A stretch of 64,000 nt of DNA, from sequence record NC_049340.1; one strand, written 5' to 3'. Numbering within the stretch: the first letter of the stretch is position 1; each line of letters opens with the position of its first letter. The position numbers and the translations under genes are program-made. The notes beneath the pieces are model-generated. The model saw only the letters and a program-made list of their open reading frames with translations, did no database searches and was not told the DNA's origin. Shown here in pieces: positions 1,070 through 61,502 of this stretch.

Positions 1070-1098
1070 AAAAATCCGAGGCAACGCCTCGGATTTTT
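1070..1098 (+). terminator. intrinsic terminator
   Basis: aaaatccgaggc-aac-gcctcggattttt; near-identical copy at 38813-38843. Confidence 0.8.
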
Positions 1099-1128
1099 CT
1101 TTTAAATACATACAATAAAGACTATATT

Positions 1129-20584: not shown

Positions 20585-22488
20585 ATGAGTAAAAAGCGAG
20601 AGGAACACAAAGTATTAGATGCTAGGACACAGGCGTATTTGAAGCCAGGTATGTGGATTGGCGAAACAAAAATAACAACATCAACATATGCTATACTAAT
20701 TGATGGATTAATACAACACAAAGAAGTTGAATATGTACCAGCATTAGTAAAGTTAATTGAAGAGATTTACACAAACTCATCCGATGAACATATTAGAACT
20801 ATCAACAATAAAAACTTCGTGGGTGGGTATTAGATAAAGTTTCTATTGATGTACGACTTGATGGATGGGTAACAGTTAGAGATAACGGTGGAATTACAAC
20901 AGAATTACATTCTAGTGGTGTTAGAACACCTAAAGCAATATTCGGTAATTTATTTTCATCATCAAATTATGATGAAAATGAGGCTAAGAAAGTTGCTGGA
21001 ACAAATGGTGTTGGTTCTGCATTAACAAACATATTTTCCAAGGAGTTTAACGTTACTACAGCAGATGGTAAAAATAAACTACATATTCGTTGGAGTGATA
21101 ATATGAAAAAGTGTGAGACTGTATCATATAAGAAATCAAAGGAACATTTCACAGAAGTAAGATTTAAATTAGATTTAGATAGATTTAAACTTAGTGAATT
21201 AAACTATGGAACTATTAAAATGATTGAGGCTAAAGTTATAGCAATGAGTGCATATAACAATGGTTTAACAGTTTCATTTAATGGTGAGGATTATAAGTTT
21301 AAATCATTATTAGACTATGTTAAGTTATATGGTTTTAATGATAGTGAAATTATATATGAAAAGAATGATGATTGGGAACATTGTATAACACCTAATATTG
21401 ATGCAAATGGTTATCATATAGGATTAATTAATGGTGCATTATGTTGTGATGGTGAAATAAAGAAACACCACGAAAAGGCAACTGTTGATAGTATTAGAAA
21501 GTTCTTAAAAACACCAACCTTTAAGAAATATAATGATGGTGAAACAATTGAACCAACATATCAATCAATCACACAAAGATTTAATTCATTCGTAAAGGCT
21601 GAGGTTATTAATCCTGAATATGACTCACAATCAAAAGATAAATTAACAACATCACCATTAATATTAGATGGTGATAAATATAGAGATAGAAAGTTTAATA
21701 TTGATAAAAAGATTAATGTTGAGTTCGCTACAATTGGGTCATTAATTGATTGGTATACACAAAAGAAAAATGCGGAGGAAGCTGGTGAGGTTCGAAAGAA
21801 AGTTAGAGAATTAAAAAAGAAAGATGTTAAATCAGTACGAAAGTTAGTTGATGCTACATCAAAAACTAAATCAACAAGAGCGAAATGTGATTTATTTATT
21901 TTCGAGGGTGATTCTGCTGGTAAGTCTTTCCGTTCAACACGAGAACCAAAAACACAAGGTGCATTATTTCTAAGAGGTAAGTGTAAGCAAGCATATGGAA
22001 TGACAACATTAAACGTACTAAAGAATGAGGAGTTTTCTAATATAGTACTTGCATTAGGTCTTGACCCAACAAAACCTGATGAGGTTGATAACTTACGATT
22101 TAGACGTGTTATTATTTGTACGGATGCAGACCGTGATGGTGATGGAATCTGTGGACAATTATTAACATTCTTCATGGTACATTTCCCAAAGTTAGTTGAA
22201 AAAGGTATGATTTACCGTTCTACAACACCATTATATGTTGCATCAAAGGGTAAACAAAGAAAGTACTTTTATTCACAATCAGAATTTGATTCATTCAAAG
22301 GTAAAGGATGGACAACAAAATATATGAAAGGTTTGGGTTCTTTATTAAAAGAACATTACAAACACATATTAACCGAACCTAGATTGATTAGGTTTAAGTC
22401 AACTGATGATACGTTTAAAATTATTACCGATTGGATGGGTAAGAACTCAACTATGAGAAAACAATATTTATCACAAAAAGTGCAATAG
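20585..22488 (+). CDS. DNA topoisomerase II large subunit (ATPase + TOPRIM; gp39/60-like), apparent frameshift near 20830
   Basis: EIYTNSSDE, RDNGG, SSSNY, AGTNGVGS (GHKL); FIFEGDSA, LRGK, ICTDADRDG, KYMKGLGS. Confidence 0.9.
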
Positions 22489-22505
22489 ATAATTTACACT
22501 TTGAT

Positions 22506-22730
22506 ATGCAAAGTGGAATGTTAGATGATGAATATACAAACTTCACACATCAAATAATGTGGTATGGTAATATGAAAACATATGCTAGATTTTATGACAT
22601 TCCATTTGCATTAATGAAACTTGGTGACCAACTAAGTAAACCTGAGAATAGAAAAATGGAACAGGGTATGTTGTATGCAAAGAAGAAAACAATATACTTT
22701 TTTGGTAACTCTAAATGTGAATTACATTAA
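22506..22730 (+). CDS. hypothetical protein
   Basis: ORF between the topoisomerase genes. Confidence 0.4.
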   Translation: MQSGMLDDEYTNFTHQIMWYGNMKTYARFYDIPFALMKLGDQLSKPENRKMEQGMLYAKKKTIYFFGNSKCELH

Positions 22731-29817: not shown

Positions 29818-30041
29818 TTCTTGGATTTTTTTGTATTTTAAAATTAAAGTTGTATATTTGACTTGTCAAAAGAGAGATAATTAAATTAAAACAAATTAAT
29901 CATGTCAAATAAAAAAGCATTAGTAAGAAAGTTTAAAGCAATGTCTAAACTGGCACAAGAATTAGGTTACTCAAATGTAAGAGAAGCTGAAAGAGCAGGT
30001 CAAGGTCATAAATTAAAAAGAGAATTTAATTTAGCAAGCTA

Positions 30042-30903: not shown

Positions 30904-30987
30904 TAAATATTATAAATAAGCAAAAAATCCTTTTGATATTTCAAAAGGATTTTTTATATTTGAAGTGTCAAACAAAAAGAGATACTT

Positions 30988-31489
30988 ATGAATAGTAAAC
31001 AATTAGAAAACGTTAAGGTAGCAGTAAAAGAATTACAAGACTTATATCATGCACAATACGACACTAAGAATGAAATATGTGTTGATGCGTTGACAAAAGA
31101 TGTTGAAGTTGTTAGATTCCTTAGTAAAAAATCATTTTTGATTCTTATGATATTAAAGTTCCTAAGGTTAAGCCATTCACAGCCGAGTATGTTTTAGAGC
31201 GTATTAGTAAGAAACAAAAATTGTGTATGTTAATTACACAGATGTTTTCAAGACTATAATTGATAAAATTGAATTACCTAGACGTGTTAGCGCAACATCT
31301 TATGGTTTAGGTATTGAGGCAATATTTGGTACACGTGAAGAGAATTTTAAAGACATGCATGCGGTTGGTGATAAACTAAAAGAATATGGTATTGAGTTCA
31401 CATACGGTGCATCTGAGGCTGAATGGGTACGTCAAATAAGAATAAGTAAGAAGCAAAGTAATATAGACAGAATTAAAGCATTAAAATAA
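30988..31489 (+). CDS. hypothetical protein (two apparent A-run frameshifts near 31128 and 31218)
   Basis: Restoring one A in each run joins ORFs 30988 and 31223. Confidence 0.45.
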
Positions 31490-31671: not shown

Positions 31672-32005
31672 AATCTTTGTTGGTGACCTAGAACCAAAAG
31701 TTATTCGAAAGGTATTTAAATCAGATTCTGATAGTATTAAATTTCTAGAGAAGTTAAATACTGATAAACTACAGACCATATATGAATTAACTACAGGCAA
31801 TAATGATACATTTAAGCCATCAAAATATTTAATTAATAGTACATCACCATACGGTACTAATTTTAATAGAAATCGGTATTTTAATGCTGATGCATACAAA
31901 ACTATTAAAGTTCGTGATTTATATCACCAAATGGCAAATGAAAATAACATCCGCACCGAGGTTAAAATTTTAACAAAGAAAACTAATAAAACTTTTGGTA
32001 AATAA
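31643..32005 (+). CDS. hypothetical protein
   Basis: ORF. Confidence 0.45.
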   Translation: MQKTIQIQVKIFVGDLEPKVIRKVFKSDSDSIKFLEKLNTDKLQTIYELTTGNNDTFKPSKYLINSTSPYGTNFNRNRYFNADAYKTIKVRDLYHQMANENNIRTEVKILTKKTNKTFGK

Positions 32006-32049
32006 AATAACATTCGCTATATTTGTATAGTAATTAAAAAGCGATAACA

Positions 32050-32250
32050 ATGTTAAACATAGTTCAAAATATTTCAGAAAACAATAATGGTGGTGAAGTT
32101 AAAGATTATAACATGCAAATCATACAAGACAAATTAAATGAGGTTGGTGTTGAAGAGGCTAAAGAGTGGTTACATTACCAAGCATTAATAACTTTAATGT
32201 ATTCTGTTGAAGAGCGTGAAGAAATGTTAAAAAGAAAAAATATTAATTAA
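32050..32250 (+). CDS. hypothetical protein
   Basis: Own TATATTTG promoter. Confidence 0.5.
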   Translation: MLNIVQNISENNNGGEVKDYNMQIIQDKLNEVGVEEAKEWLHYQALITLMYSVEEREEMLKRKNIN

Positions 32251-32309
32251 AACATTTCCTCAATTAAAAGTAAAACATTATATTTGTATAGTAATTAAAA
32301 CGATAAGAC

Positions 32310-32858: not shown

Positions 32859-32912
32859 TACTTGCATATTAAAAAACAATTTTTTATATTTGTATAACAA
32901 AAAACAAAGAAA

Positions 32913-33116
32913 ATGATTCAAGTAAATATTCCATCAACAGAAGTTAACAACATAAACGACCTAAAAGAATTAGACTATTTTCATCATGGTGGTAATATTT
33001 TTGAGTACTGTAAACAAGGTATTGAACAACTAGAAAAGCAAGGCATTGAGCCAACAGCATATAAAAATTTATTAATCATTGCCAATGAGATTAAAGAACA
33101 CTTGGCGGAAGATTAA
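32913..33116 (+). CDS. hypothetical protein
   Basis: Own promoter; terminator at 33134-33158. Confidence 0.5.
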   Translation: MIQVNIPSTEVNNINDLKELDYFHHGGNIFEYCKQGIEQLEKQGIEPTAYKNLLIIANEIKEHLAED

Positions 33117-33238
33117 ATATTTTGTTTGACGACAAAAACGCACCAAATTGTGCGTTTTATTTTTTATATTTATTAAAATTATTTTGGTATTAAAAATAAA
33201 AGTGTTATATTTGAAGAGTCAAACAAAAAGAGATAACC

Positions 33239-33508
33239 ATGAAAAAATATAATTTAAGTTTAAACAACGAGATTAACAAATTGTATAACACTCTTGAAGA
33301 GGCTAAGGCAGTTTATGATAGATACATCAGATTAGCTAGAGTTTATCAGAGTCAATTTGATGGGTATCAACATTTCGACCATATTGCAATTGATTTGGTT
33401 CATGTTGATGAGAATGGTGGTTTAGCACCGATTGAGTATTTAGAGTATTTTGATGGTGCTAAATTAGCCAACAATAGATGTGATTTAACAAATATTTTAG
33501 TAGCATAA
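33239..33508 (+). CDS. hypothetical protein
   Basis: Promoter with TTTG (33183) 19 nt upstream of TATATTTG (33206). Confidence 0.55.
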   Translation: MKKYNLSLNNEINKLYNTLEEAKAVYDRYIRLARVYQSQFDGYQHFDHIAIDLVHVDENGGLAPIEYLEYFDGAKLANNRCDLTNILVA

Positions 33509-33511
33509 GTT

Positions 33512-33871
33512 ATGAAAACATTAAGAAACATTTTAATATTTGTATTGATGTTTGTAGCATCATATACGTTTGGTCAAGAACCAAACCAAGAACAAAAAAA
33601 TGACATCAGTTTAATAATTCAGAAGAACACCAATGATTTATCCAAGCATATTGAAGTTAGATTTTTTGATGGTGACCTAATAGAAATTAAATCAACAAAG
33701 AATATTGAATATATTAGTGTTTTTAATTCAAATCAAAATATCTTCATCAAATATGGTGTTAATGATACTGTTAAATATATTCCAGTAAAATCATTAAACA
33801 AGGGTAGAAATATATTTGAATTGAAAGAACGAAAATATTATATAATGTTCAGCATAATAAAAAACAATTAA
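33512..33871 (+). CDS. secreted protein with T9SS type-A CTD-like domain
   Basis: Signal peptide MKTLRNILIFVLMFVASYTFG; C-terminal IEIK...ISVFNSN...IPVKSLNKG...FSIIKNN. Confidence 0.5.
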   Translation: MKTLRNILIFVLMFVASYTFGQEPNQEQKNDISLIIQKNTNDLSKHIEVRFFDGDLIEIKSTKNIEYISVFNSNQNIFIKYGVNDTVKYIPVKSLNKGRNIFELKERKYYIMFSIIKNN

Positions 33872-34031
33872 ACATTTATGAGTGTAATTTTAATGCATGA
33901 TACGATTAAGAACATCGAATCAAAAAACAGGCAAGATATTTTAGTTTATTTACAAAATAACTTCGATATCGTAAAAGAGAACGCACAATGTAATCGAAAT
34001 GGTGCAAAGTATTACTTATTAAAATCAAAGG

Positions 34032-34075
34032 AATAATGAATAACACAGAATTAATATTAAACTTATTACAAGGTA
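34032..34075 (+). repeat. 44 bp direct repeat, copy 1 (copy 2 at 35555-35598)
   Basis: aataatgaataacacagaattaatattaaacttattacaaggta is identical in both copies. Confidence 0.95.
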
Positions 34076-34239
34076 TCAGAATACAGGCAACGTTAAAAAC
34101 AATTTACGAAGGAGTAAAAGGGCAATATTATGGAGGAGAAGAAGCTTGGGAATTTATTAAAAATTATAGTGGTTTTGACTTAAAAGAGATTTTAACAAAA
34201 ATAGCTAACAAAAGAACACTAGAATATGGAGCTAAATAA
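34036..34239 (+). pseudogene. chimera: phage gene start fused to the C-terminal fragment of an ApaLI/XbaI-family restriction endonuclease
   Basis: First 13 codons equal those of ORF 35559; the remainder IRIQATLKTIYEGVKGQYYGGEEAWEFIKNYSGFDLKEILTKIA resembles RE_ApaLI-family C-termini. Confidence 0.6.
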
Positions 34240-35473
34240 AATATACAAAGGGAATTGCATAAAAAGATTAGCTGAATTAGAATCTAATACAGTTGACTTA
34301 ATATATTTTGACCCACCATTTTTTACACAAAAAAACACACTTTAGTAACAAGAGACGAAAGTAAAAAATATGAATTTAGTGATAATTGGCAGTCTTTAGA
34401 GGATTATCTACATTTAATAGAATCTTGTCTTATTGAGTGTAAACGAGTGCTTAAAAATTCAGGAAGTGTTTTTCTACACTGCGACAAAGTTGCTTCTCAT
34501 TATATTAGAGTAAAGTTAGACAAAGTTTTTGGTATGAAAAACTTTAGAAGCGAAATTATTTGGAGTTATAAAAGATGGTCAAATTCAAAAAAAGGTCTTT
34601 TAAACTCTCACCAAAATATATATTTCTACTCAAAAAGTAAAGATTTCAAATTTAATAAATACTTCACAAATTACGCACCAACTACCAATATTGACCAAAT
34701 TTTACAAGACAGAGCAAAAAACGTCTAATGGAAAATCTGTTTATAAAACAGATAAAAATGGAAAGATTGTTTTAGGTAAAGAGAAAAAAGGCGTTCCATT
34801 GTCTGATACTTGGGAAATTCCATATTTAAATCCTAAGGCAAAAGAAAGAGTTGGTTATCCAACCCAAAAACCAGTTTTATTACTTAAAGAGATTATTAAG
34901 ATTGTTACAAACAAAGGAGATTTAGTTGTTGACCCATTTTGTGGTAGTGGAACTACTTGTGTTGCTGCAAAATCAATGGAAAGAGATTTTATTGGAATAG
35001 ACGTTTCAAAAGATGCTGTAGAACTCGCTAATAGAAGATTAGAAGAAATGATTATTACTGACTCTGCTCTTTTAAATAAAGGTTATCAAAGTTATCTTGA
35101 AAAGTCAGATTACGAATCAGCTCTTTTAAAAAGTATAGACGCTTTACCTGTACAAAGAAATTCAGGGATTGACGGTTTTTTAAAAAATCATTTTAACGAA
35201 AAACCAGTTCCAGTAAAAATTCAAGGTAAAAATGAAACCTTGAATTATGCAATCAAAAAACTTGAAAAATCTTGTCAAGGAAAAGATTATGATTTAAAAA
35301 TTGTTATTCAAACTAGAAAAGAAGCTAAAGGAAACCGATTATTTGAATTAGTATCTGACGTAGAAATAATCAAGTCCGATAAATTGAAAATTGAGGAGTT
35401 GAAAACAAAGAGTACTGTGCCATTAAAAGAATATAAAGACCGTGAACCTGATTTCATGGAAAAAGACGATTAG
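34226..35473 (+). CDS. beta-class N6A/N4C DNA methyltransferase (bacterial R-M origin), two apparent A-run frameshifts
   Basis: DLIYFDPPF (motif IV) before YPTQKP and VVDPFCGSGTT (motif I); frameshifts at 34329-34335 and 34716-34721. Confidence 0.9.
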
Positions 35474-35556
35474 AATCCATGATAAAAACAACAATAGAAA
35501 TAACATTAGCATCCTCTAGTAATTCACATGATAAAAGGATGAATTTAATAAATAAA
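35421..35556 (+). repeat. 136 bp direct repeat, copy 1 (copy 2 at 36031-36166, one mismatch)
   Basis: cattaaaagaatataaagaccgtgaacc...gaatttaataaataaa. Confidence 0.95.
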
Positions 35557-35558
35557 TA

Positions 35559-36083
35559 ATGAATAACACAGAATTAATATTAAACTTATTACAAGGTAAA
35601 CAGTTTAAATATATGTTTACAGGAATGGTTGATGTAAATGAACGTATGTCCGAATCATATGAATTAAAAACGTATGATAATACTGGTACAGATACTATTC
35701 ATAGATTAAAGGTAGTTCCAACTAAATATAGTGCATCTGAATACACTAACATGAGAGAGTGTAAATGTGCTAATGTTGTTGTTGGTGGAGTTAAAGAAAT
35801 TCTAACAGGTAAACCATTTGGTGTTGGTTCTGAAATATATAAGGCTAGAATTTTAGTACATAACATAATTTTAGACCAATATTGTTCTATTCCAGTATTT
35901 GAGTTATATAATGATAATATCAAAGAAGTAAAAGTATTTAACATGGATGTCAAGCGTGGTGAGCAATCATTACATAGTATTACCATTACAATGTTTAGTG
36001 GTATTGAGATAAGATTATCTAGTATTGAAACATTAAAAGAATATAAAGACCGTGAACCTGATTTCATGGAAAAAGACGATTAG
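35559..36083 (+). CDS. hypothetical protein (intact copy of the duplicated gene)
   Basis: Its first and last codons are reused around the MTase insert. Confidence 0.6.
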   Translation: MNNTELILNLLQGKQFKYMFTGMVDVNERMSESYELKTYDNTGTDTIHRLKVVPTKYSASEYTNMRECKCANVVVGGVKEILTGKPFGVGSEIYKARILVHNIILDQYCSIPVFELYNDNIKEVKVFNMDVKRGEQSLHSITITMFSGIEIRLSSIETLKEYKDREPDFMEKDD

Positions 36084-36088
36084 AAACC

Positions 36089-36514
36089 ATGATAAAAACA
36101 ACAATAGAAATAACATTAGCATCCTCTAGTAATTCACATGATAAAAGGATGAATTTAATAAATAAAAGCCAAACAAAAATTTTGGATTACCTTGATAAGA
36201 GGTTATTTAAGTATAATGTAAGAACAAGTGATTCTGATAATATACTACAAATAGTTAATAGTAGTATAGAGGACACTAAAGGTACTTACGAGGTATATCC
36301 AACAAAGTTAACATTCAATATAGAATATAAAACACAAAGTGAATTAGGTTCTTTATTGAAGACCAATGAACGAAATAAGGTTAGGTTATTAAATACTTAT
36401 GTATCAAAAAATAACCAAGAAATTACATCAATTGTAAATAAGTTGGTTAAAAATCTTAATAGATGGTATTCAGGTAATTTAATTAACCAAGAAATTAAAA
36501 TCACAAATGAGTAA
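36089..36514 (+). CDS. hypothetical protein
   Basis: ORF coupled to DHFR. Confidence 0.5.
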   Translation: MIKTTIEITLASSSNSHDKRMNLINKSQTKILDYLDKRLFKYNVRTSDSDNILQIVNSSIEDTKGTYEVYPTKLTFNIEYKTQSELGSLLKTNERNKVRLLNTYVSKNNQEITSIVNKLVKNLNRWYSGNLINQEIKITNE

Positions 36515-37078
36515 AATAAAATTAATATCAGCAGTATCAAGAAACGGAATAATAGGAAAGAATAATACTCTTATTTGGAAGTTAAGAAAAGACCTAGCTT
36601 GGTTTAAGAAACAAACATTAAATACTGTTATGATAATGGGTAGAAGTACATTTGAATCACTTCCATCATTATTACCAAATCGTGAGCATTGGATATTATC
36701 TAGAACCATGAATATACAACCAATGGTAGAGTAAATTCAAAACAAAGAGTAAGAGTATTTAGGTCATATGAAGAAGCTATTACAGAAGCAAAAGAGCGAG
36801 GTTTAGACGTTTCTGTTATCGGTGGGTCAAAAGTTTATGAAACTGCCTTAAATCTACATGAGAAAGGCAAATATAAGCTGTATGAAGTTCTATTAACTGA
36901 ATTAGAATCTATTGTTCTTGGTGATACTTACTTCCCACATTTTGAGAAGAAGAATTTTCATAAACATACTCTTGGAGTTGAAGAAGAGTTTTGTGATATA
37001 ACCAAGGTTAATTATAAAATGTCATTTACTAAGTATGTTCCAAAAACTATTGTTCGTAAATTGGGTGAAAAGTATTAG
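36507..37078 (+). CDS. folA: dihydrofolate reductase, apparent frameshift near 36711
   Basis: LISAVSRNGIIGKNNTLIW, DLAWFK, IMGRSTFESL, LLPNRE; after the shift SVIGGSKVY and GDTYFP. Confidence 0.9.
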
Positions 37079-37197
37079 GTAAAAATGTTGTAGTCAAAGA
37101 TAATTCACCAAAATCAATTGAGAATATTGCATTAGATTTTTATAAATTTCCATTCAAACTACATAACGAAATTAGGGTTTTATGTGATGATAATTCA

Positions 37198-37509
37198 ATG
37201 GCATTTGATTTTTGTCATAGGGTTACACAAAATGCATTTGGTGGTAAAGGTATAGTGTTGGGTCAGCAGACCAAAGATAAGATTGTAAGACGTATTAATA
37301 ATGACCATACAGTTACATTTAATACAAAGTTTAGGTACAACAAATCAAAACAACACTTAGAGTGTTTAACGGACATTAATAATGATGAATGGAAGCCATT
37401 TGCATTAGTTCGTGGGTGGGGTAAATTACACACTAAGATGTCAATTGAAGACTCTGCAATAGTTCAGGATACATTCGCACAAATGATAGTTAATAAACTA
37501 AACGCATAA
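37198..37509 (+). CDS. hypothetical protein (frame open further upstream)
   Basis: ORF. Confidence 0.45.
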   Translation: MAFDFCHRVTQNAFGGKGIVLGQQTKDKIVRRINNDHTVTFNTKFRYNKSKQHLECLTDINNDEWKPFALVRGWGKLHTKMSIEDSAIVQDTFAQMIVNKLNA

Positions 37510-38812: not shown

Positions 38813-38843
38813 AAAAAATCCGAGGCATTGCCTCGGATTTTTT
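38813..38843. terminator. bidirectional terminator between convergent operons
   Basis: aaaaaatccgaggc-att-gcctcggattttt. Confidence 0.8.
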
Positions 38844-39126
38844 ATTTACTTTTAATAACACCACTTACCGGGCCGTTAGGCGCACTAAGACCACTAACAT
38901 CAAAATCTTGACTAGTGATATAATCATCAATTATTGTTGCTAGTTTATTAGATAACACATCAGCAAACGTATTTGCTGTAGCCTCACTAACCTTACTGAT
39001 AACTACTTCCATACTATCATTTTCATTTACGATATTTGGGTCAAATGATTTTGCGGTTGCTTGTTTCTGTGCATCTTTAAAGACACTCTTTAAATCTGAA
39101 CTCAATTTATTTTTATTTCTAGCCAT
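38842..39126 (-). CDS. small baseplate/spike-associated protein
   Basis: Immediately downstream of the gp5-like gene; ends GLSAPNGPVSGVI. Confidence 0.4.
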   Translation of the reverse strand: MARNKNKLSSDLKSVFKDAQKQATAKSFDPNIVNENDSMEVVISKVSEATANTFADVLSNKLATIIDDYITSQDFDVSGLSAPNGPVSGVIKSK

Positions 39127-41128: not shown

Positions 41129-41173
41129 AGGTTTGTTTTATACTATGTATTATATAAAACAATTATACAAAAT

Positions 41174-42667
41174 ATGCTTATAAACGTAACACAACAAGAT
41201 GCATCAGTAACATTATCATATGTTAAGAATAATCTTATAGAGGTTAAGACCTATCCAGTTTATCAATATAATGGTATAGGTACATATGATTATCGTATTG
41301 CTAGATATGATGGTGACCCTGATATCGTAAATAACTTGGTTCATTATAAAGATGATAAGAAAGTTAAGCGTGTCATGTCATATAAATTCGATTTTGATAC
41401 ACTAAGAGAATTTATCACACAAGTAATACCTGAGGAAGATAGAAATGAAATATTCACACTAGAAATGCCTGGCGCATATAAATGTGATATTGAAATTGCT
41501 GTAGGTGATGGTGAGATATTCCCTGACCCATATTTAGCCGAAATGGTTATTGATAGTATTCAAATAACCGCACCTAACCTAAATACGGTAACAATTACAT
41601 GTAATCCAAGAGTTAAAAAAGCTGGTACACCTGAGGGTGATAAACAAATAAATGATATTGAAGATGCCATAAATAAGCATTTTGAACAAGTTGATTTTGT
41701 TAAAACATTAACTGATAGGATTAAGTATTCACATATTGTATATGATACGGAAACTGAAATGTTAGAACGTTGGTGGCGATTAATTAATACAACATTACAT
41801 GCTGTTGGATTTTGGAATGGTAGTGGATTTGATGTTCCATACTTATGGAATAGGTGTAAAAAATTAGGTGTTGATGTTGGTATGGGTTCACCAACTGGTG
41901 AAGTATCTAATCGTGAAATGTGGTGTAGACATAGACATATTGTTGATGATATGCAGATTGTTGAAAACTTCTCACATGATTTGGGAACAAAACAATCACT
42001 TTCATTAGATTATATTAGTAATAGAATTTTTGGGGTTGGTAAAATACCATATGATGGTAGTTTTAGTGACTTATATAATGGTTGTATTATTAGATATATG
42101 ACGTATGGTGCTGTTGATACCATATTACAACAATTAATTGAACAAAACCGAAAATACTCAGCAGGTTCTGAGGCGATGGCATATTATTGTAAAATACCGA
42201 TTGTTGATGTTGGTAAAACAACTGCATTAGTTCACGCTGTTATTTGGGATGAGTTATATAAGCAGGGTAAGATAAATGCTGAGGAATATTTCAAAAAAGA
42301 AAAAACACCGTATGGTGGTGGTTTTGTTAAACAGCCAACACGAAAGTTTTGTATGTATCCAGTTGGTGTTGATTTTTCTGCACTATATCCAAGAGTTATA
42401 CAAACATGTAATATATCTTTTGAGAATTATATGGGTAGAGTTCGTGATAAAAAACATGCTGAGGAATTACGTGCGCAGGGATATTTTGTTGCTGTAAGTG
42501 GAAACTATTACAAGAATGATAAAACATATTGTTTAAAATCGGTACAAGATAAGTTTCTATCTGAGCGATATTTGTATAAGGACTTACAGTTTGCAATATG
42601 GCAAGAGGTTGTTCCAACACTAGAGGCTGAATTAAAACGTAGGGGAATAAACCCAAAGAAATTATAA
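41174..42667 (+). CDS. DNA polymerase B, part 1 (3'-5' exonuclease + motif A)
   Basis: CDIE (ExoI), WNGSGFDVPYL (ExoII), YGAVD (ExoIII), YGGGFV, VDFSALYP (motif A); ends within the fingers. Confidence 0.9.
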   Translation: MLINVTQQDASVTLSYVKNNLIEVKTYPVYQYNGIGTYDYRIARYDGDPDIVNNLVHYKDDKKVKRVMSYKFDFDTLREFITQVIPEEDRNEIFTLEMPGAYKCDIEIAVGDGEIFPDPYLAEMVIDSIQITAPNLNTVTITCNPRVKKAGTPEGDKQINDIEDAINKHFEQVDFVKTLTDRIKYSHIVYDTETEMLERWWRLINTTLHAVGFWNGSGFDVPYLWNRCKKLGVDVGMGSPTGEVSNREMWCRHRHIVDDMQIVENFSHDLGTKQSLSLDYISNRIFGVGKIPYDGSFSDLYNGCIIRYMTYGAVDTILQQLIEQNRKYSAGSEAMAYYCKIPIVDVGKTTALVHAVIWDELYKQGKINAEEYFKKEKTPYGGGFVKQPTRKFCMYPVGVDFSALYPRVIQTCNISFENYMGRVRDKKHAEELRAQGYFVAVSGNYYKNDKTYCLKSVQDKFLSERYLYKDLQFAIWQEVVPTLEAELKRRGINPKKL

Positions 42668-42718
42668 ATTTTTACTAACATTGTTTAATACATTAAAACA
42701 AAAATAATTTTATTCAAA

Positions 42719-43558
42719 ATGGAAAGTACACAAATCGTAAAATTAAAAAACGTAAAGTTAAGTGAACTACAGACAGCATTCAAACGTTCTTTATCTATTG
42801 GTGGTGAAACATTAAATTTTAAAATCACACCAACATCAATAACAAATGTAGCTGAACATTCAAGTCAATCATTATATAAAAAATGGGAATTGTCTTTAGG
42901 CGATGTTTGTGATAGTGTTGATGGTCAATTCAGAGAATTAAAAGTTGCTATCTATAGTGGTAATGAATTTGTATCAAAGATTTTAGGATTCTTTGGACAA
43001 TTAGCTGACTTAGAAATTCAACACGAAAATGGTAATGTTAATAAAATTAACATCATTAAGTTAGATGAAAAAGGTAAAAGACTTTTAAGGATTGCATTAG
43101 TTACGGCATCTGTTACATCTTCATATAAAGAAATTGATTCTGATATGGTTTCAAACATCTTTAATCCTGATATGGAAACAAAGGCTAGTTTAATTTTATC
43201 ACCTGATGATTTAAAACAATTAAATAACTTAGCTAAGTTAACAACGAATCCTGAGGAACAAACAAACTATATAACTATAAAATCAGAGAATGGTCAATTA
43301 GTTGCTACTGATGGTGCATTTGATATTGCATTACGTGATAGAACAGAAGAGTTGGATGCTATTGAGATTGATAAAGAATTATTCTCATGTATTGAGCATG
43401 AAAATTATACTGCATCTGTTTATGACCTTGGTGAGAGTGGTATGTTATTATTAAATTCTGAAAATTCAAATTCACAAATTGCTGTAGTATTATTATCTGA
43501 TGCTGATGATTCGGTATCATGGGATGATTTTGAAACTGACACAAACTGGGATAATTAA
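42719..43558 (+). CDS. probable sliding clamp (gp45/PCNA-like)
   Basis: 279 aa two-domain size; LSPDDLKQL..LAKL and ITIKSENGQLVATD resemble T4 gp45; acidic tail; polymerase context. Confidence 0.55.
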   Translation: MESTQIVKLKNVKLSELQTAFKRSLSIGGETLNFKITPTSITNVAEHSSQSLYKKWELSLGDVCDSVDGQFRELKVAIYSGNEFVSKILGFFGQLADLEIQHENGNVNKINIIKLDEKGKRLLRIALVTASVTSSYKEIDSDMVSNIFNPDMETKASLILSPDDLKQLNNLAKLTTNPEEQTNYITIKSENGQLVATDGAFDIALRDRTEELDAIEIDKELFSCIEHENYTASVYDLGESGMLLLNSENSNSQIAVVLLSDADDSVSWDDFETDTNWDN

Positions 43559-43628
43559 TTTATGTAGTTTATTCTAAATATTATTAGGGCGCACTTCGTG
43601 CGCCCATTCATTAACTAAAACTATATAA

Positions 43629-44684
43629 ATGAGAGCAGAAGATGTGAATGATAGAATACATGAATTGGAGTCTAAAATATGCATTAATCCAATAAAATAT
43701 TTTGATGATATTAACACATCATGTCTAACCGAATTTGAATTAATTTATTTCAAAAAGTATTTAACTGATTACATTTCGAATAAGTTGAAAGATGGTGTTT
43801 TAATTGACCCAAAATCAAGAATCGGAATGAAGATGTTTAAGAATATTGAAATACTTTTGGATAAGTGTCTTTCTAGAGTTGAATTATATTCATGGAAACA
43901 TTGTGACCATACAATAAAGGGGTTCTTGGTTTATAACAAAATAAAAGAAATAAGATGTCCTAATTGCGGAACACTACAAAATCCACCAAAAAATATAAGT
44001 AGTTTTGTACATACATTTAATGATTTTAGAGTATATTTCAATGATTTATGTAATTCAAAACACACAAATATTTCAAGACAATTAACGAATTTGAAGAAAT
44101 ATGGATATGCATCACATTTCTCAACAAAAGAGACTCGTGAAAAAATCCGAAAAACTAATCTTATTAAATATGGTGTTGATAATCCAACAAAATATAAAGA
44201 AATAAATGATAGAATAATAGAAACAAAATTAAAAAGGTATGGTACATTAAGTTTTAATAAATATGTTAATGATGGAAACTTTGTTAGAAAGCAATATACA
44301 TCCAAAGAATGTGAACAATTTCTATCTACATATATAACACCATTATTTAAATATTATGGCGTGGATGATAACATAATGTTTGGTGATAAAGAGTATTCTG
44401 TATTAATACCAAATACATTTAACGATGTACTAAAACACGTAACAATGTATGATTTTTATTCACCAAAATACTCTATTATTTTTGAATATCATGGTTCATA
44501 TTGGCATAATAATGAAAAAGCCAAGATAAAGGATAGGGAGAAATTAGAATTTGCTAGAGATTATTTAGGGATTATGAACTATTTCACAATATGGGATTAT
44601 CAAGCAAAGGATAGTAAATTAATTAAAGAAGTACAGAACGAAATTATAAAAATAATAGATGAATATGAGAGCAGAGTTAGCTGA
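43629..44684 (+). mobile_element. free-standing Vsr-like (EDxHD) homing endonuclease
   Basis: TNLxKYG repeats; SKECEQF, YDFY, IFEYHGSYWH, FTIWD. Confidence 0.75.
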
Positions 44685-45486
44685 ATACAAAACCATGGTA
44701 GGTTCGGAATATAATAACCTAATGCAAAAAAATGAACATGATGACTTAATGAACATTCTAATTGCTGGTGATTATACTACAATGTCTGATGATGATTTGA
44801 TAAAGACATACAAACATGCAAAAAAGATGCAAGATTTTTATAAGATGATGCAACTTTGTTGTAAGCTATTATGTAATTCTGTATACGGTGGATTTGGTAC
44901 GGCATCATTACGATATTTTTTACAAGCTGTTGCATCAGATATTACTGCTGAGGGTAGAAATGTTACTCAGTTAGTTGATAAGATGGCAAATCAATATTTT
45001 CAAAAATCTTGGCAAAAGGATTCTAATTGGTTCAATGAGTTAAAAGATAAGTTTCCAAATATCATACCTGATTCATTACAAGCACCGCACCCAATCAAAA
45101 AAGACATATGTATTTATGCGGATACGGATAGTGTTGTTGGTGATTCTATACTAAGATTGTCTGATGGTAGGTCTATTAAAATAGAAGATTTATTTAAAGA
45201 ATCAAAATATACACATACAGACCATAAGGGTAATGAGTTTGCAACACCTACCGTTAATATACTAAATTATACTAAGGATAATGAGTTATATTATGCGAAA
45301 CCAAAACACATAGTTAGACATAAAGTATCCAAGGCAAAATGGAAGTTAAAGACCAAAAGTGGCAAAGAAATTATAGTCACTAACGACCATTCTATGATTG
45401 TGTTTAGAAGTGGCGAACAACTAACAGTTAAACCAAGTGAAATACTAAAGACTGATAAAATTTTAGTTATTAAAGATGGTAGATAA
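44659..45486 (+). CDS. DNA polymerase B, part 2 (motif B, motif C N-half) fused to split intein N-fragment
   Basis: KLLCNSVYGGFG, ITAEGR, IYADTD followed by the intein start SVVGDS. Confidence 0.9.
   Translation: MNMRAELAEYKTMVGSEYNNLMQKNEHDDLMNILIAGDYTTMSDDDLIKTYKHAKKMQDFYKMMQLCCKLLCNSVYGGFGTASLRYFLQAVASDITAEGRNVTQLVDKMANQYFQKSWQKDSNWFNELKDKFPNIIPDSLQAPHPIKKDICIYADTDSVVGDSILRLSDGRSIKIEDLFKESKYTHTDHKGNEFATPTVNILNYTKDNELYYAKPKHIVRHKVSKAKWKLKTKSGKEIIVTNDHSMIVFRSGEQLTVKPSEILKTDKILVIKDGR
45130..45483 (+). mobile_element. split intein N-fragment (118 aa, Ser1)
   Basis: SVVGDSILRL (block A), IIVTNDHS (block B); stop codon follows. Confidence 0.9.
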
Positions 45487-46519
45487 CATAAAGATTTTAA
45501 TAAATAAACATAGAACAACAAAAGATACCAAATATCTTTTGTTGTTGTTTAATTTATATGAAAAATATCATAATATAATTTTACCTAGATGTAAAGTTAC
45601 TGGCGGTCATATATATTGGTATGATACTCGATTCTCTTGGTATAATAACACATTAAATATAAAGGGAAAGTCCAGCTATTCAAATAAAATTGTTAATGGT
45701 AATAAGTATTATTTAACAGTATCTGAACATGGATTGTTTATTAAATTTGGTGACGATTTTAGTAGAATAAATAAACATAGGTTATTCAACACTATAAATA
45801 AATTAACTAAATTTTCTTTTGGCATAAATAACATTGATGCAAAAGCACAAAACAAAAAATGTGCAATAACATTGGATAATATGATTTCTAAATACGGTGT
45901 TGAAATAGGTACAGATAAATATAATGCCTATTGTGAAAAGCAAAGAATAACTTCAACTGATAAATATATTCGAAATAAGTTTGGTGAAGAATATTTAACA
46001 AAGGTTAAAGATGCTAAATCACATAATTTTAATTATTATCTTAGATTATCTAATGGTGATGTTGAGGTTGCCAAAGAATTACATAAAAAATACCATGAGC
46101 AAAGAATTAATAATATTGGTTCAATTTCAAAAAATTCTTTACACTTATTTAATACAATAATAAATAAATTCAATATTTTATCAGACTCATATTACGGTGA
46201 AAATGAATTTGGATTATATGATAAAGAGTTTAAGCGATATTATAAATATGACTTTACATCAACAAAATATAAATTCATTATAGAATTTAATGGTGATGTT
46301 TTTCATGGAAATCCAAAAATTTATAATGAAACTGATAGACCAAATTTTTTTAATACTAAAAAAACATGTTCTGAAATATGGGCATATGATAAACAAAAAA
46401 TAAATTTAGCTAAAGAGCATGGTTTTGATGTTTTTGTTGTATGGGAAAGTGAATTTAATAATGAATATATAGAACTAGTGAATAGATTGTTTAATACTAT
46501 AAAACATAAAATAAAATAG
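45476..46519 (+). mobile_element. free-standing Vsr-like (EDxHD) homing endonuclease between the intein halves
   Basis: ISKNSLHLF, YKYDF, IIEFNGDVFHGNP, VFVVWESE. Confidence 0.8.
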
Positions 46520-46520
46520 G

Positions 46521-47501
46521 ATGGAATATTTATTTGATGAAATAGAATCAATTGAGTGTATAGGTGAATTTGAAAATGAATTTGTATATGATATTGAAAT
46601 GGAAGACGAATCACACACATTCATAGCAAATGATATACTTGTACATAATTCAAATTATTTAACATTTGATGAGATATTCAAATCAATTGATTGTGATTAT
46701 GAAAATACGCCTACAAAAGAATGTGTTGATTTTATCGAATACTTCTTTAAGAATAAGATGAACGCAATGTATGATAAATTCCTAACAAAATACTATGATA
46801 GTAGAGGGTGTGACAACCATCATATTTTTGAATTAGAGGTTATTGGTGGGTATGGTGTATTTATTGCAAAAAAGAAGTATATCTTTAGTAAATTATGGGA
46901 TGATGGTAACTATGTTGCTAGTAAAGGTGGATTGAAGACAACAGGTGTTGAAATTATTCAATCAAGTACATCAAATTTTGTTAGGAGTAGTATAAAAACT
47001 TTTGTAAATTTGATATTCTCTAAAAGAGGGAAAATATCTAGTGATTTATTCTTTAATATGTGTAATGCACTTAGACGTAAATTAGAAACAGTACCGATTG
47101 ATGATATATCTAAAATTAGTGGACTAAAGACATACGATAAATATGTTGTTGAGTGGAAAGATAGAATTATTCTAGAAAAGAAATGTCCAGCACCAGTTAG
47201 AGGTGCAGTTAGATACAATCATTTAATCTATCAAAAAGGTTTGCAGAATAAGTATGCATACTTAAAGAATGGTATGAAGTGTAAAATGTATTATGATAAG
47301 CAAGGGAATCCATTTGCATACCATGATGAATCATTTCCACATGAAATTGCACCACCAATATCTAGAGAAATTCAGTTAGAGAAATTAATATTTTCACCAG
47401 TAAAACGATTGGTTAGTGGTGGAATGATTGAGGGAAGTTTATCAAACATGGGAACTGGTAAGAATTTACCAAGTTTTAAGAACATGTTTAAGAAGAAATA
47501 A
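46521..47501 (+). CDS. split intein C-fragment (43 aa, 46521-46649) fused to DNA polymerase B part 3 (palm/thumb)
   Basis: VYDIEMEDESHTFIANDILVHN|SNYL; AKKKY, LKTTGVEIIQSS. Confidence 0.9.
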   Translation: MEYLFDEIESIECIGEFENEFVYDIEMEDESHTFIANDILVHNSNYLTFDEIFKSIDCDYENTPTKECVDFIEYFFKNKMNAMYDKFLTKYYDSRGCDNHHIFELEVIGGYGVFIAKKKYIFSKLWDDGNYVASKGGLKTTGVEIIQSSTSNFVRSSIKTFVNLIFSKRGKISSDLFFNMCNALRRKLETVPIDDISKISGLKTYDKYVVEWKDRIILEKKCPAPVRGAVRYNHLIYQKGLQNKYAYLKNGMKCKMYYDKQGNPFAYHDESFPHEIAPPISREIQLEKLIFSPVKRLVSGGMIEGSLSNMGTGKNLPSFKNMFKKK

Positions 47502-61437: not shown

Positions 61438-61502
61438 ATAATATTTTGTAGTTTAAAAATAAGTGTTATATTTGTAGTGTAATAATTTAATAACTATAGA
61501 AT

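What the first reader, a model, noticed from the sequence alone, without database searches (positions are those of the whole stretch)
34032..36166. Recent capture of a bacterial R-M methyltransferase inside a duplicated phage gene
A ~610 bp phage unit (35555-36166) is present twice. In the first copy only the 44 bp head (34032-34075) and 136 bp tail (35421-35556) remain, and the middle is replaced by 1345 bp (34076-35420). That insert carries the 3' end of an ApaLI/XbaI-family REase gene and a complete beta-class MTase. The original gene stays intact, the nuclease is truncated, and the MTase gains the phage gene's last 16 residues (LKEYKDREPDFMEKDD). One mismatch in 180 bp implies a very recent event. 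An amino-MTase partner fits XbaI-type TCTAGA better than m5C ApaLI (from memory), and TCTAGA is common here (e.g. 2238, 6531, 11159). This looks like a snapshot of anti-restriction gene capture by duplication-insertion.
Basis: partly seen in the sequence, partly recalled or inferred. Interest (0 to 1): 0.8.

Follow-up and report, generated by a model that had tools for sequence, protein, structure and literature searches.

The report
Host methylase fragment in duplicated phage gene
Tenacibaculum phage PTm1 carries a 1.3-kb piece of a bacterial restriction-modification operon spliced into one copy of a freshly duplicated orphan gene, but the captured methylase gene is interrupted in the deposited sequence, so this is a clear footprint of gene capture and not a demonstrated anti-restriction weapon.

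Summary
The window is Tenacibaculum maritimum jumbo phage PTm1. Its sister PTm5 has the same structure.

**Confirmed**
- The repeat is real: head 44/44 and tail 135/136 in PTm1, and 136/136 in PTm5.
- A 610-bp unit (orphan ORF-227 plus the start of ORF-228) is tandemly duplicated. In copy 1 the interior is replaced by 1345 bp.
- That insert is 94.3% identical in DNA to an intact ApaLI-like R-M operon in a Tenacibaculum MAG.
- It keeps the last ~54 of 264 REase codons. It also keeps the beta-class amino-methyltransferase minus 3 codons, fused in frame to ORF-227's last 16 codons.

**Corrected**
- The methyltransferase is not complete as deposited. Two single-base frameshifts, identical in both phages, split it into three open pieces.
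- One is a length difference in a long homopolymer run, and these assemblies show homopolymer-length noise. The other is not. Gene integrity is therefore unresolved.
- The XbaI/TCTAGA assignment has no support. Specificity is unknown.

**Verdict**
The capture and its recency are well supported. Function is unproven and, as the records stand, probably lost. This is a new member of a known kind (phage orphan methylases of R-M origin) and of moderate interest.

The parts
33135..33158 (+). Terminator-like hairpin that ends the preceding transcription unit
33183..33219 (+). Promoter-like intergenic motif (TTG ... TTATATTTG core, Bacteroidetes-type -7 element). It is the nearest upstream candidate promoter for the unit that contains the insert.
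   Evidence: The promoter role is inferred.
34032..34075 (+). Head of copy 1: 4 nt upstream plus the first 13 codons of ORF-227
   Evidence: 44/44 identical to 35555-35598
34036..34239 (+). Chimeric ORF (PTm1_ORF-223, 67 aa): 13 phage codons fused in frame to the last ~54 codons of an ApaLI-like REase. It overlaps the methyltransferase start by 14 nt, as in the intact bacterial operon.
34076..35420 (+). 1345-bp insert of bacterial origin (fragment of an R-M operon)
   Evidence: 94.3% nt identity to L003:3462-4814; junction alignments
34226..35473 (+). Beta-class N6/N4 amino-methyltransferase gene. It is broken by 2 single-base frameshifts as deposited. Its native last 3 codons are replaced by the last 16 codons and stop of ORF-227.
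   Evidence: the insert is identical in PTm5
35421..35556 (+). Tail of copy 1: last 16 codons and stop of ORF-227, the spacer, and the first 26 codons of ORF-228
   Evidence: 135/136 to 36031-36166; 136/136 in PTm5
35479..35559 (+). Truncated duplicate of the ORF-228 start (26 codons). Its stop overlaps the ORF-227 start codon at the tail-to-head joint.
   Evidence: read from the sequence
35555..36166 (+). Complete duplicated unit (copy 2); period 610 bp with a 2-nt overlap at the joint
35559..36083 (+). Intact orphan gene ORF-227 (174 aa), function unknown
36089..36514 (+). ORF-228 (141 aa), function unknown; its first 78 nt belong to the duplicated unit
38813..38843 (.). Strong bidirectional terminator hairpin (14 pairs), the likely end of the transcription unit

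Best explanation
In the common ancestor of phages PTm1 and PTm5, three illegitimate joints with short microhomology produced the present structure. (i) A 610-bp segment holding the orphan gene ORF-227 and the start of ORF-228 was duplicated head to tail. (ii, iii) The 430-bp interior of the first copy was replaced by 1345 bp from an ApaLI-like Type II R-M operon of a Tenacibaculum-like bacterium. The order of events cannot be told, and one multi-switch replication event is equally possible. The duplication left one intact ORF-227, so the capture cost the phage nothing. The fragment holds a dead REase stub (about 20% of the gene) and almost the whole beta-class amino-methyltransferase. Both are fused in frame to phage coding sequence and sit inside a phage transcription unit. 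As the two deposited genomes stand, the methyltransferase is interrupted by two frameshifts. The most likely present state is therefore a recently acquired but already inactivated passenger gene, not a working anti-restriction methylase. Shown here: the structure, the bacterial origin, the truncation, the fusions, and the interruptions as deposited. Inferred: the mechanism of joining, expression by read-through, and loss of function.
For: - Repeat identities. It is the only such repeat in the window.
- The same structure, with an identical insert, is in PTm5.
- Intact R(264 aa)-M(402-404 aa) operons with the same overlap occur in bacteria. DNA identity is 94.3% to a Tenacibaculum MAG.
- No close phage homologue of M or R exists outside PTm1/PTm5.
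- Junction microhomology: 6 of 7 nt on the left, 1 nt plus 8 of 12 on the right, and 2 nt at the tail-to-head joint.
- Two single-base length differences appear against every intact relative. The catalytic DPPF motif and the SAM-binding FxGxG motif lie in different open pieces.
- One of the two differences is not a homopolymer-length change.
- A second gene of the same operon, DHFR, is also split, away from any long run, in both phages. Real decay of accessory genes here is therefore plausible.
- Operon context.
Against: - The assemblies carry homopolymer-length noise. PTm1 and PTm5 differ by 12 one-base indels against only 15 substitutions over 63.6 kb. Nine of the 12 lie in runs, and PTm1 is the shorter in 9 of 12.
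- The window has no run of 8 or more, where about 12 would be expected from the bacterial ratio.
- One of the two methyltransferase breaks is exactly such a long-run length difference.
- On the phage branch the gene shows 10 synonymous to 5 non-synonymous codon changes in 396 codons and no stop in the bacterial frame. That is indistinguishable from the intact bacterial copies.
- The REase stub changes about 3 times as densely as the methyltransferase (p = 0.03).
- Both fusions are in frame (chance 1 in 9). The left one preserves the native R-M overlap, as expected if methylase expression was once selected.
- The two breaks cancel in length.
Confidence: 0.58

Rival explanations
1. The two frameshifts are base-calling artefacts. 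The phage encodes an intact hybrid methyltransferase (about 399 bacterial residues plus 16 phage residues) that is translationally coupled to the chimeric leader ORF. It methylates phage DNA and protects it from ApaLI-like R-M systems, which are common in Flavobacteriaceae.
For: - Homopolymer-length noise in both assemblies.
- One break is a long-run length difference.
- The purifying-selection pattern and the absence of stops in the bacterial frame.
- In-frame junctions that keep the native 14-nt R/M overlap.
- All motifs are present.
Against: - Both breaks are identical in two separately deposited genomes.
- The second break is not a run-length difference.
- PTm5 does call runs of 8 elsewhere.
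- DHFR in the same operon is also split, away from any run.
- GTGCAC, the ApaLI site, is mildly depleted (1 observed, 6 expected). That would be unnecessary if the site were protected, though the real specificity is unknown.
Confidence: 0.3
2. The insert is old. The repeats look young only because gene conversion between the tandem copies keeps them identical.
For: - The insert is 5.7% diverged from the nearest known bacterial copy, and about 1.6% of that lies on the phage-side branch.
- The REase stub carries 6 changes in 55 codons on that branch.
Against: - The branch also includes the unknown donor lineage.
- 44-bp and 136-bp direct repeats would be expected to delete the structure over long times.
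- No diverged relative with the insert exists in any collection searched.
Confidence: 0.08
3. The structure is an assembly or host-contamination chimera.
For: Only that the insert is bacterial-like, and that raw reads could not be inspected.
Against: - It is present in PTm1 and PTm5, which differ elsewhere by large indels and were therefore assembled separately.
- The tail-to-head joint has only a 2-nt overlap, which no assembler would create.
- The scan of one genome per bacterial species returned no Tenacibaculum maritimum locus, and the closest bacterial DNA found is 94% identical.
- Insert GC is 29.0%, the same as the phage's 29.2%.
Confidence: 0.02
4. The retained, in-frame C-terminal REase stub (chimeric 67-aa ORF) is itself the useful part, for example a decoy subunit that interferes with the host's homodimeric REase.
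For: The ORF is open across the joint and keeps 87.5% identity to the REase C-terminus.
Against: - An in-frame fusion has a 1 in 3 chance.
- The stub shows 4 non-synonymous to 2 synonymous changes and the highest change density on the phage branch, as expected for neutral decay.
- No structural information exists for this REase family.
Confidence: 0.02

Closest known systems
Phage-borne orphan DNA methyltransferases derived from bacterial R-M systems (a concept reviewed widely, e.g. PMC12707154 and PMC10286901, found)
   Same: A methyltransferase gene without a working cognate nuclease sits in a lytic phage genome. It is clearly of bacterial R-M ancestry and lies in an accessory-gene operon.
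   Different: Here the nuclease stub is still attached and the three recombination joints are still readable. The gene is interrupted as deposited, and no methylation or protection has been shown.
ApaLI-like (PF09499) REase plus beta-class N6/N4 methyltransferase operons of Flavobacteriaceae (L003 Tenacibaculum MAG, L007, L032 and others)
   Same: 94.3% nt identity, the same R-then-M order, and the same 14-nt overlap.
   Different: The phage copy lacks the first ~210 REase codons and the last 3 methyltransferase codons, is fused to phage coding sequence at both ends, and carries two frameshifts. In L003 the operon sits between transposase remnants.
Beta-class amino-methyltransferases with solved structures: CcrM, M.MboIIA, M.RsrI, DpnA
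   Same: The motif order is IV (DPPF) before I (FxGxG), and these are the best PDB sequence matches.
   Different: The similarity is distant (E 1e-16 to 1e-22). This family has an extra ~125-residue C-terminal region with no Pfam match. The recognition sequence is unknown.
Microhomology-mediated tandem duplication and foreign-DNA capture in phage accessory regions (for example modular shuffling in the hyperplastic regions of T4-type phages; from my own knowledge)
   Same: Short or no homology at the joints, small accessory ORFs, and a head-to-tail duplication.
   Different: No repeated regulatory cassette lies at the joints here. The captured DNA is bacterial, not phage.

Membership tests
ApaLI-like restriction endonuclease (Pfam PF09499) | Significant match to the family profile | tested here: met
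   E = 2.2e-9, 37.8 bits against a cutoff of 25, for the phage stub. The intact L003 protein gives E = 3e-84 over profile positions 2-187.
ApaLI-like restriction endonuclease (Pfam PF09499) | Full-length catalytic domain present | tested here: not met
   Only profile positions 152-187 of 189, equal to residues 209-264 of 264, are present. It is a remnant, not a nuclease.
Beta-class N6-adenine/N4-cytosine DNA methyltransferase (Pfam PF01555) | Motif IV (D/S-P-P-Y/F) N-terminal to motif I (FxGxG), with the whole profile covered | tested here: met
   DPPF is in the first open piece and FxGSG in the last. Together the pieces cover the profile. The best structural relatives are CcrM, M.MboIIA and M.RsrI.
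Beta-class N6-adenine/N4-cytosine DNA methyltransferase (Pfam PF01555) | One uninterrupted reading frame | tested here: not met
   There are two single-base frameshifts as deposited, identical in PTm1 and PTm5. Whether both are real is open.
Phage orphan (anti-restriction) methyltransferase | Methyltransferase without a functional cognate REase in a phage genome | tested here: met
   The REase is reduced to about 20% of its length, and tblastn with the intact REase finds no other copy in the PTm1 or PTm5 records.
Phage orphan (anti-restriction) methyltransferase | Phage DNA methylated at the cognate site, giving protection from the matching REase | not testable with these tools
   No methylome or read data are available, and the site statistics do not discriminate.
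XbaI-type R-M (TCTAGA) | REase or MTase related to R.XbaI or M.XbaI, or the site shown to be TCTAGA | tested here: inconclusive
   - No named XbaI hit came back from Pfam, NCBIfam or the PDB.
- XbaI and ApaLI are separate clusters in PMC2441816.
- TCTAGA is at expectation in the phage and only mildly low in carrier loci.
Tandem duplication by illegitimate recombination | Head-to-tail repeat of one contiguous unit with a novel joint of 0 to a few nt of homology | tested here: met
   The period is 610 bp, tail end and head start overlap by 2 nt, and the copies are 179/180 (PTm1) and 180/180 (PTm5) identical over what remains.

The most novel reading that the evidence does not exclude
The frameshifts are artefacts, and the locus is a working, very young hybrid gene. 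In this reading, a bacterial methyltransferase was captured together with the last fifth of its nuclease gene. The phage start codon drives a chimeric leader ORF whose stop still overlaps the methylase start, so the native translational coupling is retained. A tandem duplication kept an intact ORF-227. This would be a rare, fully readable intermediate showing how a lytic jumbo phage turns a host R-M operon into an anti-restriction gene.
Probability: 0.25. Interest if true: 0.5.

Novelty: new member of a known kind. Interest (0 to 1): 0.3.

Why it matters
Phages are known to carry methyltransferases of R-M ancestry, but the act of capture is rarely visible. Here all three joints, the nuclease stub, the donor family and the buffering duplication can still be read at single-base resolution. 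The locus is therefore a useful worked example of illegitimate gene capture in a jumbo phage of a fish pathogen. It also warns that the deposited PTm1 and PTm5 sequences contain homopolymer-length uncertainty that affects gene calls. It does not reveal a new mechanism, and the functional claim is unproven.

Tried and rejected
- **Sister phages lacking the insert.** None exist. ORF-227 is found only in PTm1 and PTm5 in the phage collection, IMG/VR and the 5.8-billion-protein collection.
- **Exact left-junction scan of metagenome contigs.** No match.
- **Closer donor on plasmids.** No match.
- **Closest protein relative.** It is 95% identical, but its ENA contig has no DNA on file.
- **AlphaFold on ORF-227.** Mean pLDDT was 31, which is unusable, so no fold search was run.
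- **PHROGs, Pfam and NCBIfam on ORF-222, ORF-227 and ORF-228.** Nothing.
- **Recognition site from palindrome depletion.** In 156 kb of loci carrying orthologous operons, GTGCAC and TCTAGA are both only mildly low (z about -2.0 and -1.6), and GTATAC is lower (z -3.7). This is not decisive.
- **Literature on the M.ApaLI type.** Nothing is held. The original PTm1 paper (Kawato et al. 2020) is not held, so the sequencing platform is unknown.
- **XbaI assignment.** Rejected as unsupported.
- **Assembly chimera.** Rejected (see rival explanations).
- **Transfer from phage to bacteria.** Rejected. The intact operon is widespread in Bacteroidota, and only a truncated copy is in the phage.
Full report
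**Identity of the window.**
Megablast of 33000-37500 gives a 100% match to Tenacibaculum phage PTm1 (AP019524 / NC_049340; 224,680 bp; host Tenacibaculum maritimum). It gives 99.9% to its sister PTm5 (AP019525). Window position equals record position minus 124,000. Both records annotate the region as 'type II restriction endonuclease', then 'DNA methyltransferase', 'hypothetical protein' and 'DNA methyltransferase', then a hypothetical protein (PTm1_ORF-223 to ORF-227).

**The observation.**
- The head 34032-34075 equals 35555-35598 (44/44).
- The tail 35421-35556 matches 36031-36166 at 135/136. Identity stops abruptly on both sides.
- In PTm5 the two tails are 136/136. The single mismatch is therefore private to PTm1, and the common ancestor had 180/180.
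- A scan of the whole window finds no other long near-perfect direct repeat.
- The period is 610 bp. The end of tail 1 and the start of head 2 overlap by two bases.
- The structure is therefore a head-to-tail duplication of one contiguous unit. That unit runs from 4 nt upstream of ORF-227, through ORF-227 and a 5-nt spacer, into the first 78 nt of ORF-228. In the first copy, 430 bp of interior are replaced by 1345 bp.
- The joint creates a 26-codon stub of ORF-228 whose stop overlaps the ORF-227 start codon.

**What the insert is.**
- The 67-aa ORF across the left joint matches only the last part of Pfam RE_ApaLI: profile positions 152-187 of 189.
- The rest of the insert matches Pfam N6_N4_Mtase and, below their cutoffs, NCBIfam adenine-methyltransferase models.
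- The largest open piece finds more than 7000 relatives. Full-length ones are 401-405 aa, are mostly from Flavobacteriaceae and other Bacteroidota, and reach 95% identity.
- In one genome per species, 28 loci carry a relative.
- At the DNA level, window 34069-35421 aligns to L003 (an uncultured Tenacibaculum MAG) at 94.3% and to L007 at 88.5%. It aligns to about twenty other Bacteroidota loci, mostly Flavobacteriaceae, at 74-81%.
- In L003, in L032 and in the contig of P0002, the operon is intact: a 264-aa REase followed by a 402-404-aa methyltransferase, with the REase end overlapping the methyltransferase start.
- In L003 the operon lies between an integrase-core fragment and an IS110-type transposase fragment.
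- Among 50,697 phage records the REase is found only as the PTm1/PTm5 stub (residues 209-264 of 264). The nearest phage methyltransferases are at most 36% identical.
- The direction of transfer is therefore from bacterium to phage. The donor was a Tenacibaculum-like flavobacterium, and no exact donor is known. No T. maritimum locus was returned, and there is no plasmid match.
- Insert GC (29.0%) equals phage GC (29.2%), so composition says nothing.

**The joints.** Three-way alignments are.
- On the left, phage and donor share 6 of 7 bases around the crossover.
- On the right they share one base at the crossover and 8 of 12 just before it.
- The tail-to-head joint shares two bases.
- Both fusions are in frame. 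Phage codons 1-13 continue into REase codon 211 onward. The methyltransferase runs to its third-last codon and then into the last 16 codons and stop of ORF-227.
- The chance of both being in frame is 1 in 9.
- Because the left fusion is in frame, the chimeric ORF still ends inside the methyltransferase start, as in the native operon. Translational coupling would thus be preserved. This point is inference.

**Correction: the methyltransferase is not one ORF.**
- As the sequence stands, the PF01555 profile is covered by three open pieces, and the middle one is in a different frame from the outer two.
- Against L003 and L007 there are exactly two internal single-base length differences of opposite sign, so the net length is unchanged.
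- The catalytic DPPF motif and the FxGSG SAM-binding motif lie in different pieces.
- The whole insert is base-for-base identical in PTm5.

**Are the breaks real?**

Evidence that they may be artefacts:
- Over 63.6 kb PTm1 and PTm5 differ by 15 substitutions but by 12 one-base indels. Nine of these are in runs of four or more, and PTm1 is the shorter in nine.
- The window has 25 runs of 7 and none longer. Pooled bacterial loci have about half as many runs of 8 or more as runs of 7, which predicts about 12.
- One methyltransferase break is a length difference in a long run.
- On the phage-side branch the methyltransferase has 10 synonymous and 5 non-synonymous codon changes in 396 codons and no stop in the bacterial frame, like the intact bacterial copies. 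The REase stub has 2 synonymous and 4 non-synonymous changes in 55 codons, a density about 3 times higher (Fisher p = 0.03).

Evidence that they are real:
- They are identical in two separately deposited genomes.
- The second break is not a run-length change.
- PTm5 does call runs of 8 elsewhere.
- The DHFR gene a few hundred bases downstream is also split into two frames in both phages (Pfam positions 2-69 and 66-157), with no run of 5 or more in the zone.

I put about 0.6 on at least one break being real, in which case the gene is inactive. I put about 0.3 on an intact, possibly working, hybrid gene.

**Context.**
A terminator-like hairpin (33135-33158) and a promoter-like motif with a TTATATTTG core (33183-33219) precede ORF-220. 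That motif recurs in front of neighbouring genes. A 14-pair bidirectional terminator lies at 38813-38843. The insert brings no obvious signals of its own, so any expression would be by read-through in this accessory operon. This is inference.

**Recognition site.**
- TCTAGA occurs 21 times. The expected count is 10.7 from dinucleotide shuffles and 21.6 from a Markov estimate, so it is not avoided.
- GTGCAC occurs once against about 6 expected.
- In 156 kb of loci carrying orthologous operons, both are only mildly low.
- Orlowski & Bujnicki 2008 list XbaI and ApaLI as separate REase clusters (PMC2441816).
- No tool returned an XbaI-named relative, and no solved structure exists for the REase family.
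- DPPF and the best PDB relatives (CcrM, M.MboIIA, M.RsrI, DpnA) favour N6-adenine methylation, but the site is unknown.

**Recency.**
Zero differences in 180 bp gives a 95% upper bound of about 1.7% divergence between the copies, unless gene conversion homogenises them. The 44-bp and 136-bp direct repeats should also make the structure unstable by homologous deletion. Both points argue for a young event.

**Comparison with what is known, and verdict.**
Phage orphan methyltransferases of R-M ancestry are a well-known class. This locus is a new member of that class, with unusually legible capture scars: a nuclease stub, three joints and a buffering duplication. The genes themselves were already annotated. 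The architecture does not appear in any of the held papers I read that mention PTm1. The capture is solid. The anti-restriction function is unproven and, as deposited, probably lost.

The pieces were searched apart.
- I did slip in one respect.
- I have not repeated those details here, and I have deleted nothing.

Noticed in passing
window 36483-37075 (+): The dihydrofolate reductase gene is split into two reading frames (Pfam DHFR_1 positions 2-69 and 66-157). That is one frameshift, present in both PTm1 and PTm5, with no homopolymer run of 5 or more in the zone. Only the first part is annotated in GenBank.
   Followed up: partly
whole window: Several 6-bp palindromes are strongly depleted against a Markov expectation: GAATTC 0 vs 22.5, GGTACC 0 vs 9.5, TCATGA 1 vs 11.6, CTTAAG 2 vs 11.3, TACGTA 2 vs 10.1. 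This suggests the phage escapes several Type II systems by site avoidance.
   Followed up: partly
whole window vs PTm5 (L033, L034): PTm1 and PTm5 differ by 12 one-base indels against 15 substitutions, mostly in homopolymer runs. PTm1 has no run of 8 or more in 64 kb. This probably reflects homopolymer-length error in the deposited assemblies and would affect several gene calls, for example the differing ORF lengths of PTm1_ORF-230 and ORF-231 and their PTm5 counterparts.
   Followed up: partly
window 29830-29866, 30924-30992, 31987-32039, 32248-32300, 32866-32910, 33175-33243, 61444-61480: A recurring intergenic motif with a TTATATTTG core lies upstream of + strand genes. It resembles the Bacteroidetes -7 promoter element TAnnTTTG (from my own knowledge) and is a likely phage promoter family.
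   Followed up: partly
window ~22482-22514 and ~32986-32993: PTm5 carries about 825 bp where PTm1 has 33 bp, directly after the topoisomerase II/GyrB-like gene. The two PTm5 ORFs there have no Pfam match. PTm5 also has about 150 bp extra inside the homologue of PTm1_ORF-219.
   Followed up: partly
L003:2285-2722 and L003:4969-5547: In the Tenacibaculum MAG the intact R-M operon is flanked by an integrase-core (rve) fragment and an IS110-family transposase fragment, so it sits in a mobile context in the bacterium.
   Followed up: no
L003:4447-4824 (equivalent to the last third of the window gene 34226-35473): This methyltransferase family has an extra C-terminal region of about 125 residues after the PF01555 domain, with no Pfam match.
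   Followed up: partly
window 1070-1104 and 38814-38848: The same GC-rich hairpin terminator sequence occurs twice, 37.7 kb apart, at 89% identity.
   Followed up: no
window ~41170-47500: According to the PTm5 annotation, the DNA polymerase is encoded in several separate pieces. They are interspersed with an 'intein-containing split DNA polymerase precursor' and a VSR-type endonuclease gene. This suggests mobile-element invasion of an essential gene.
   Followed up: no
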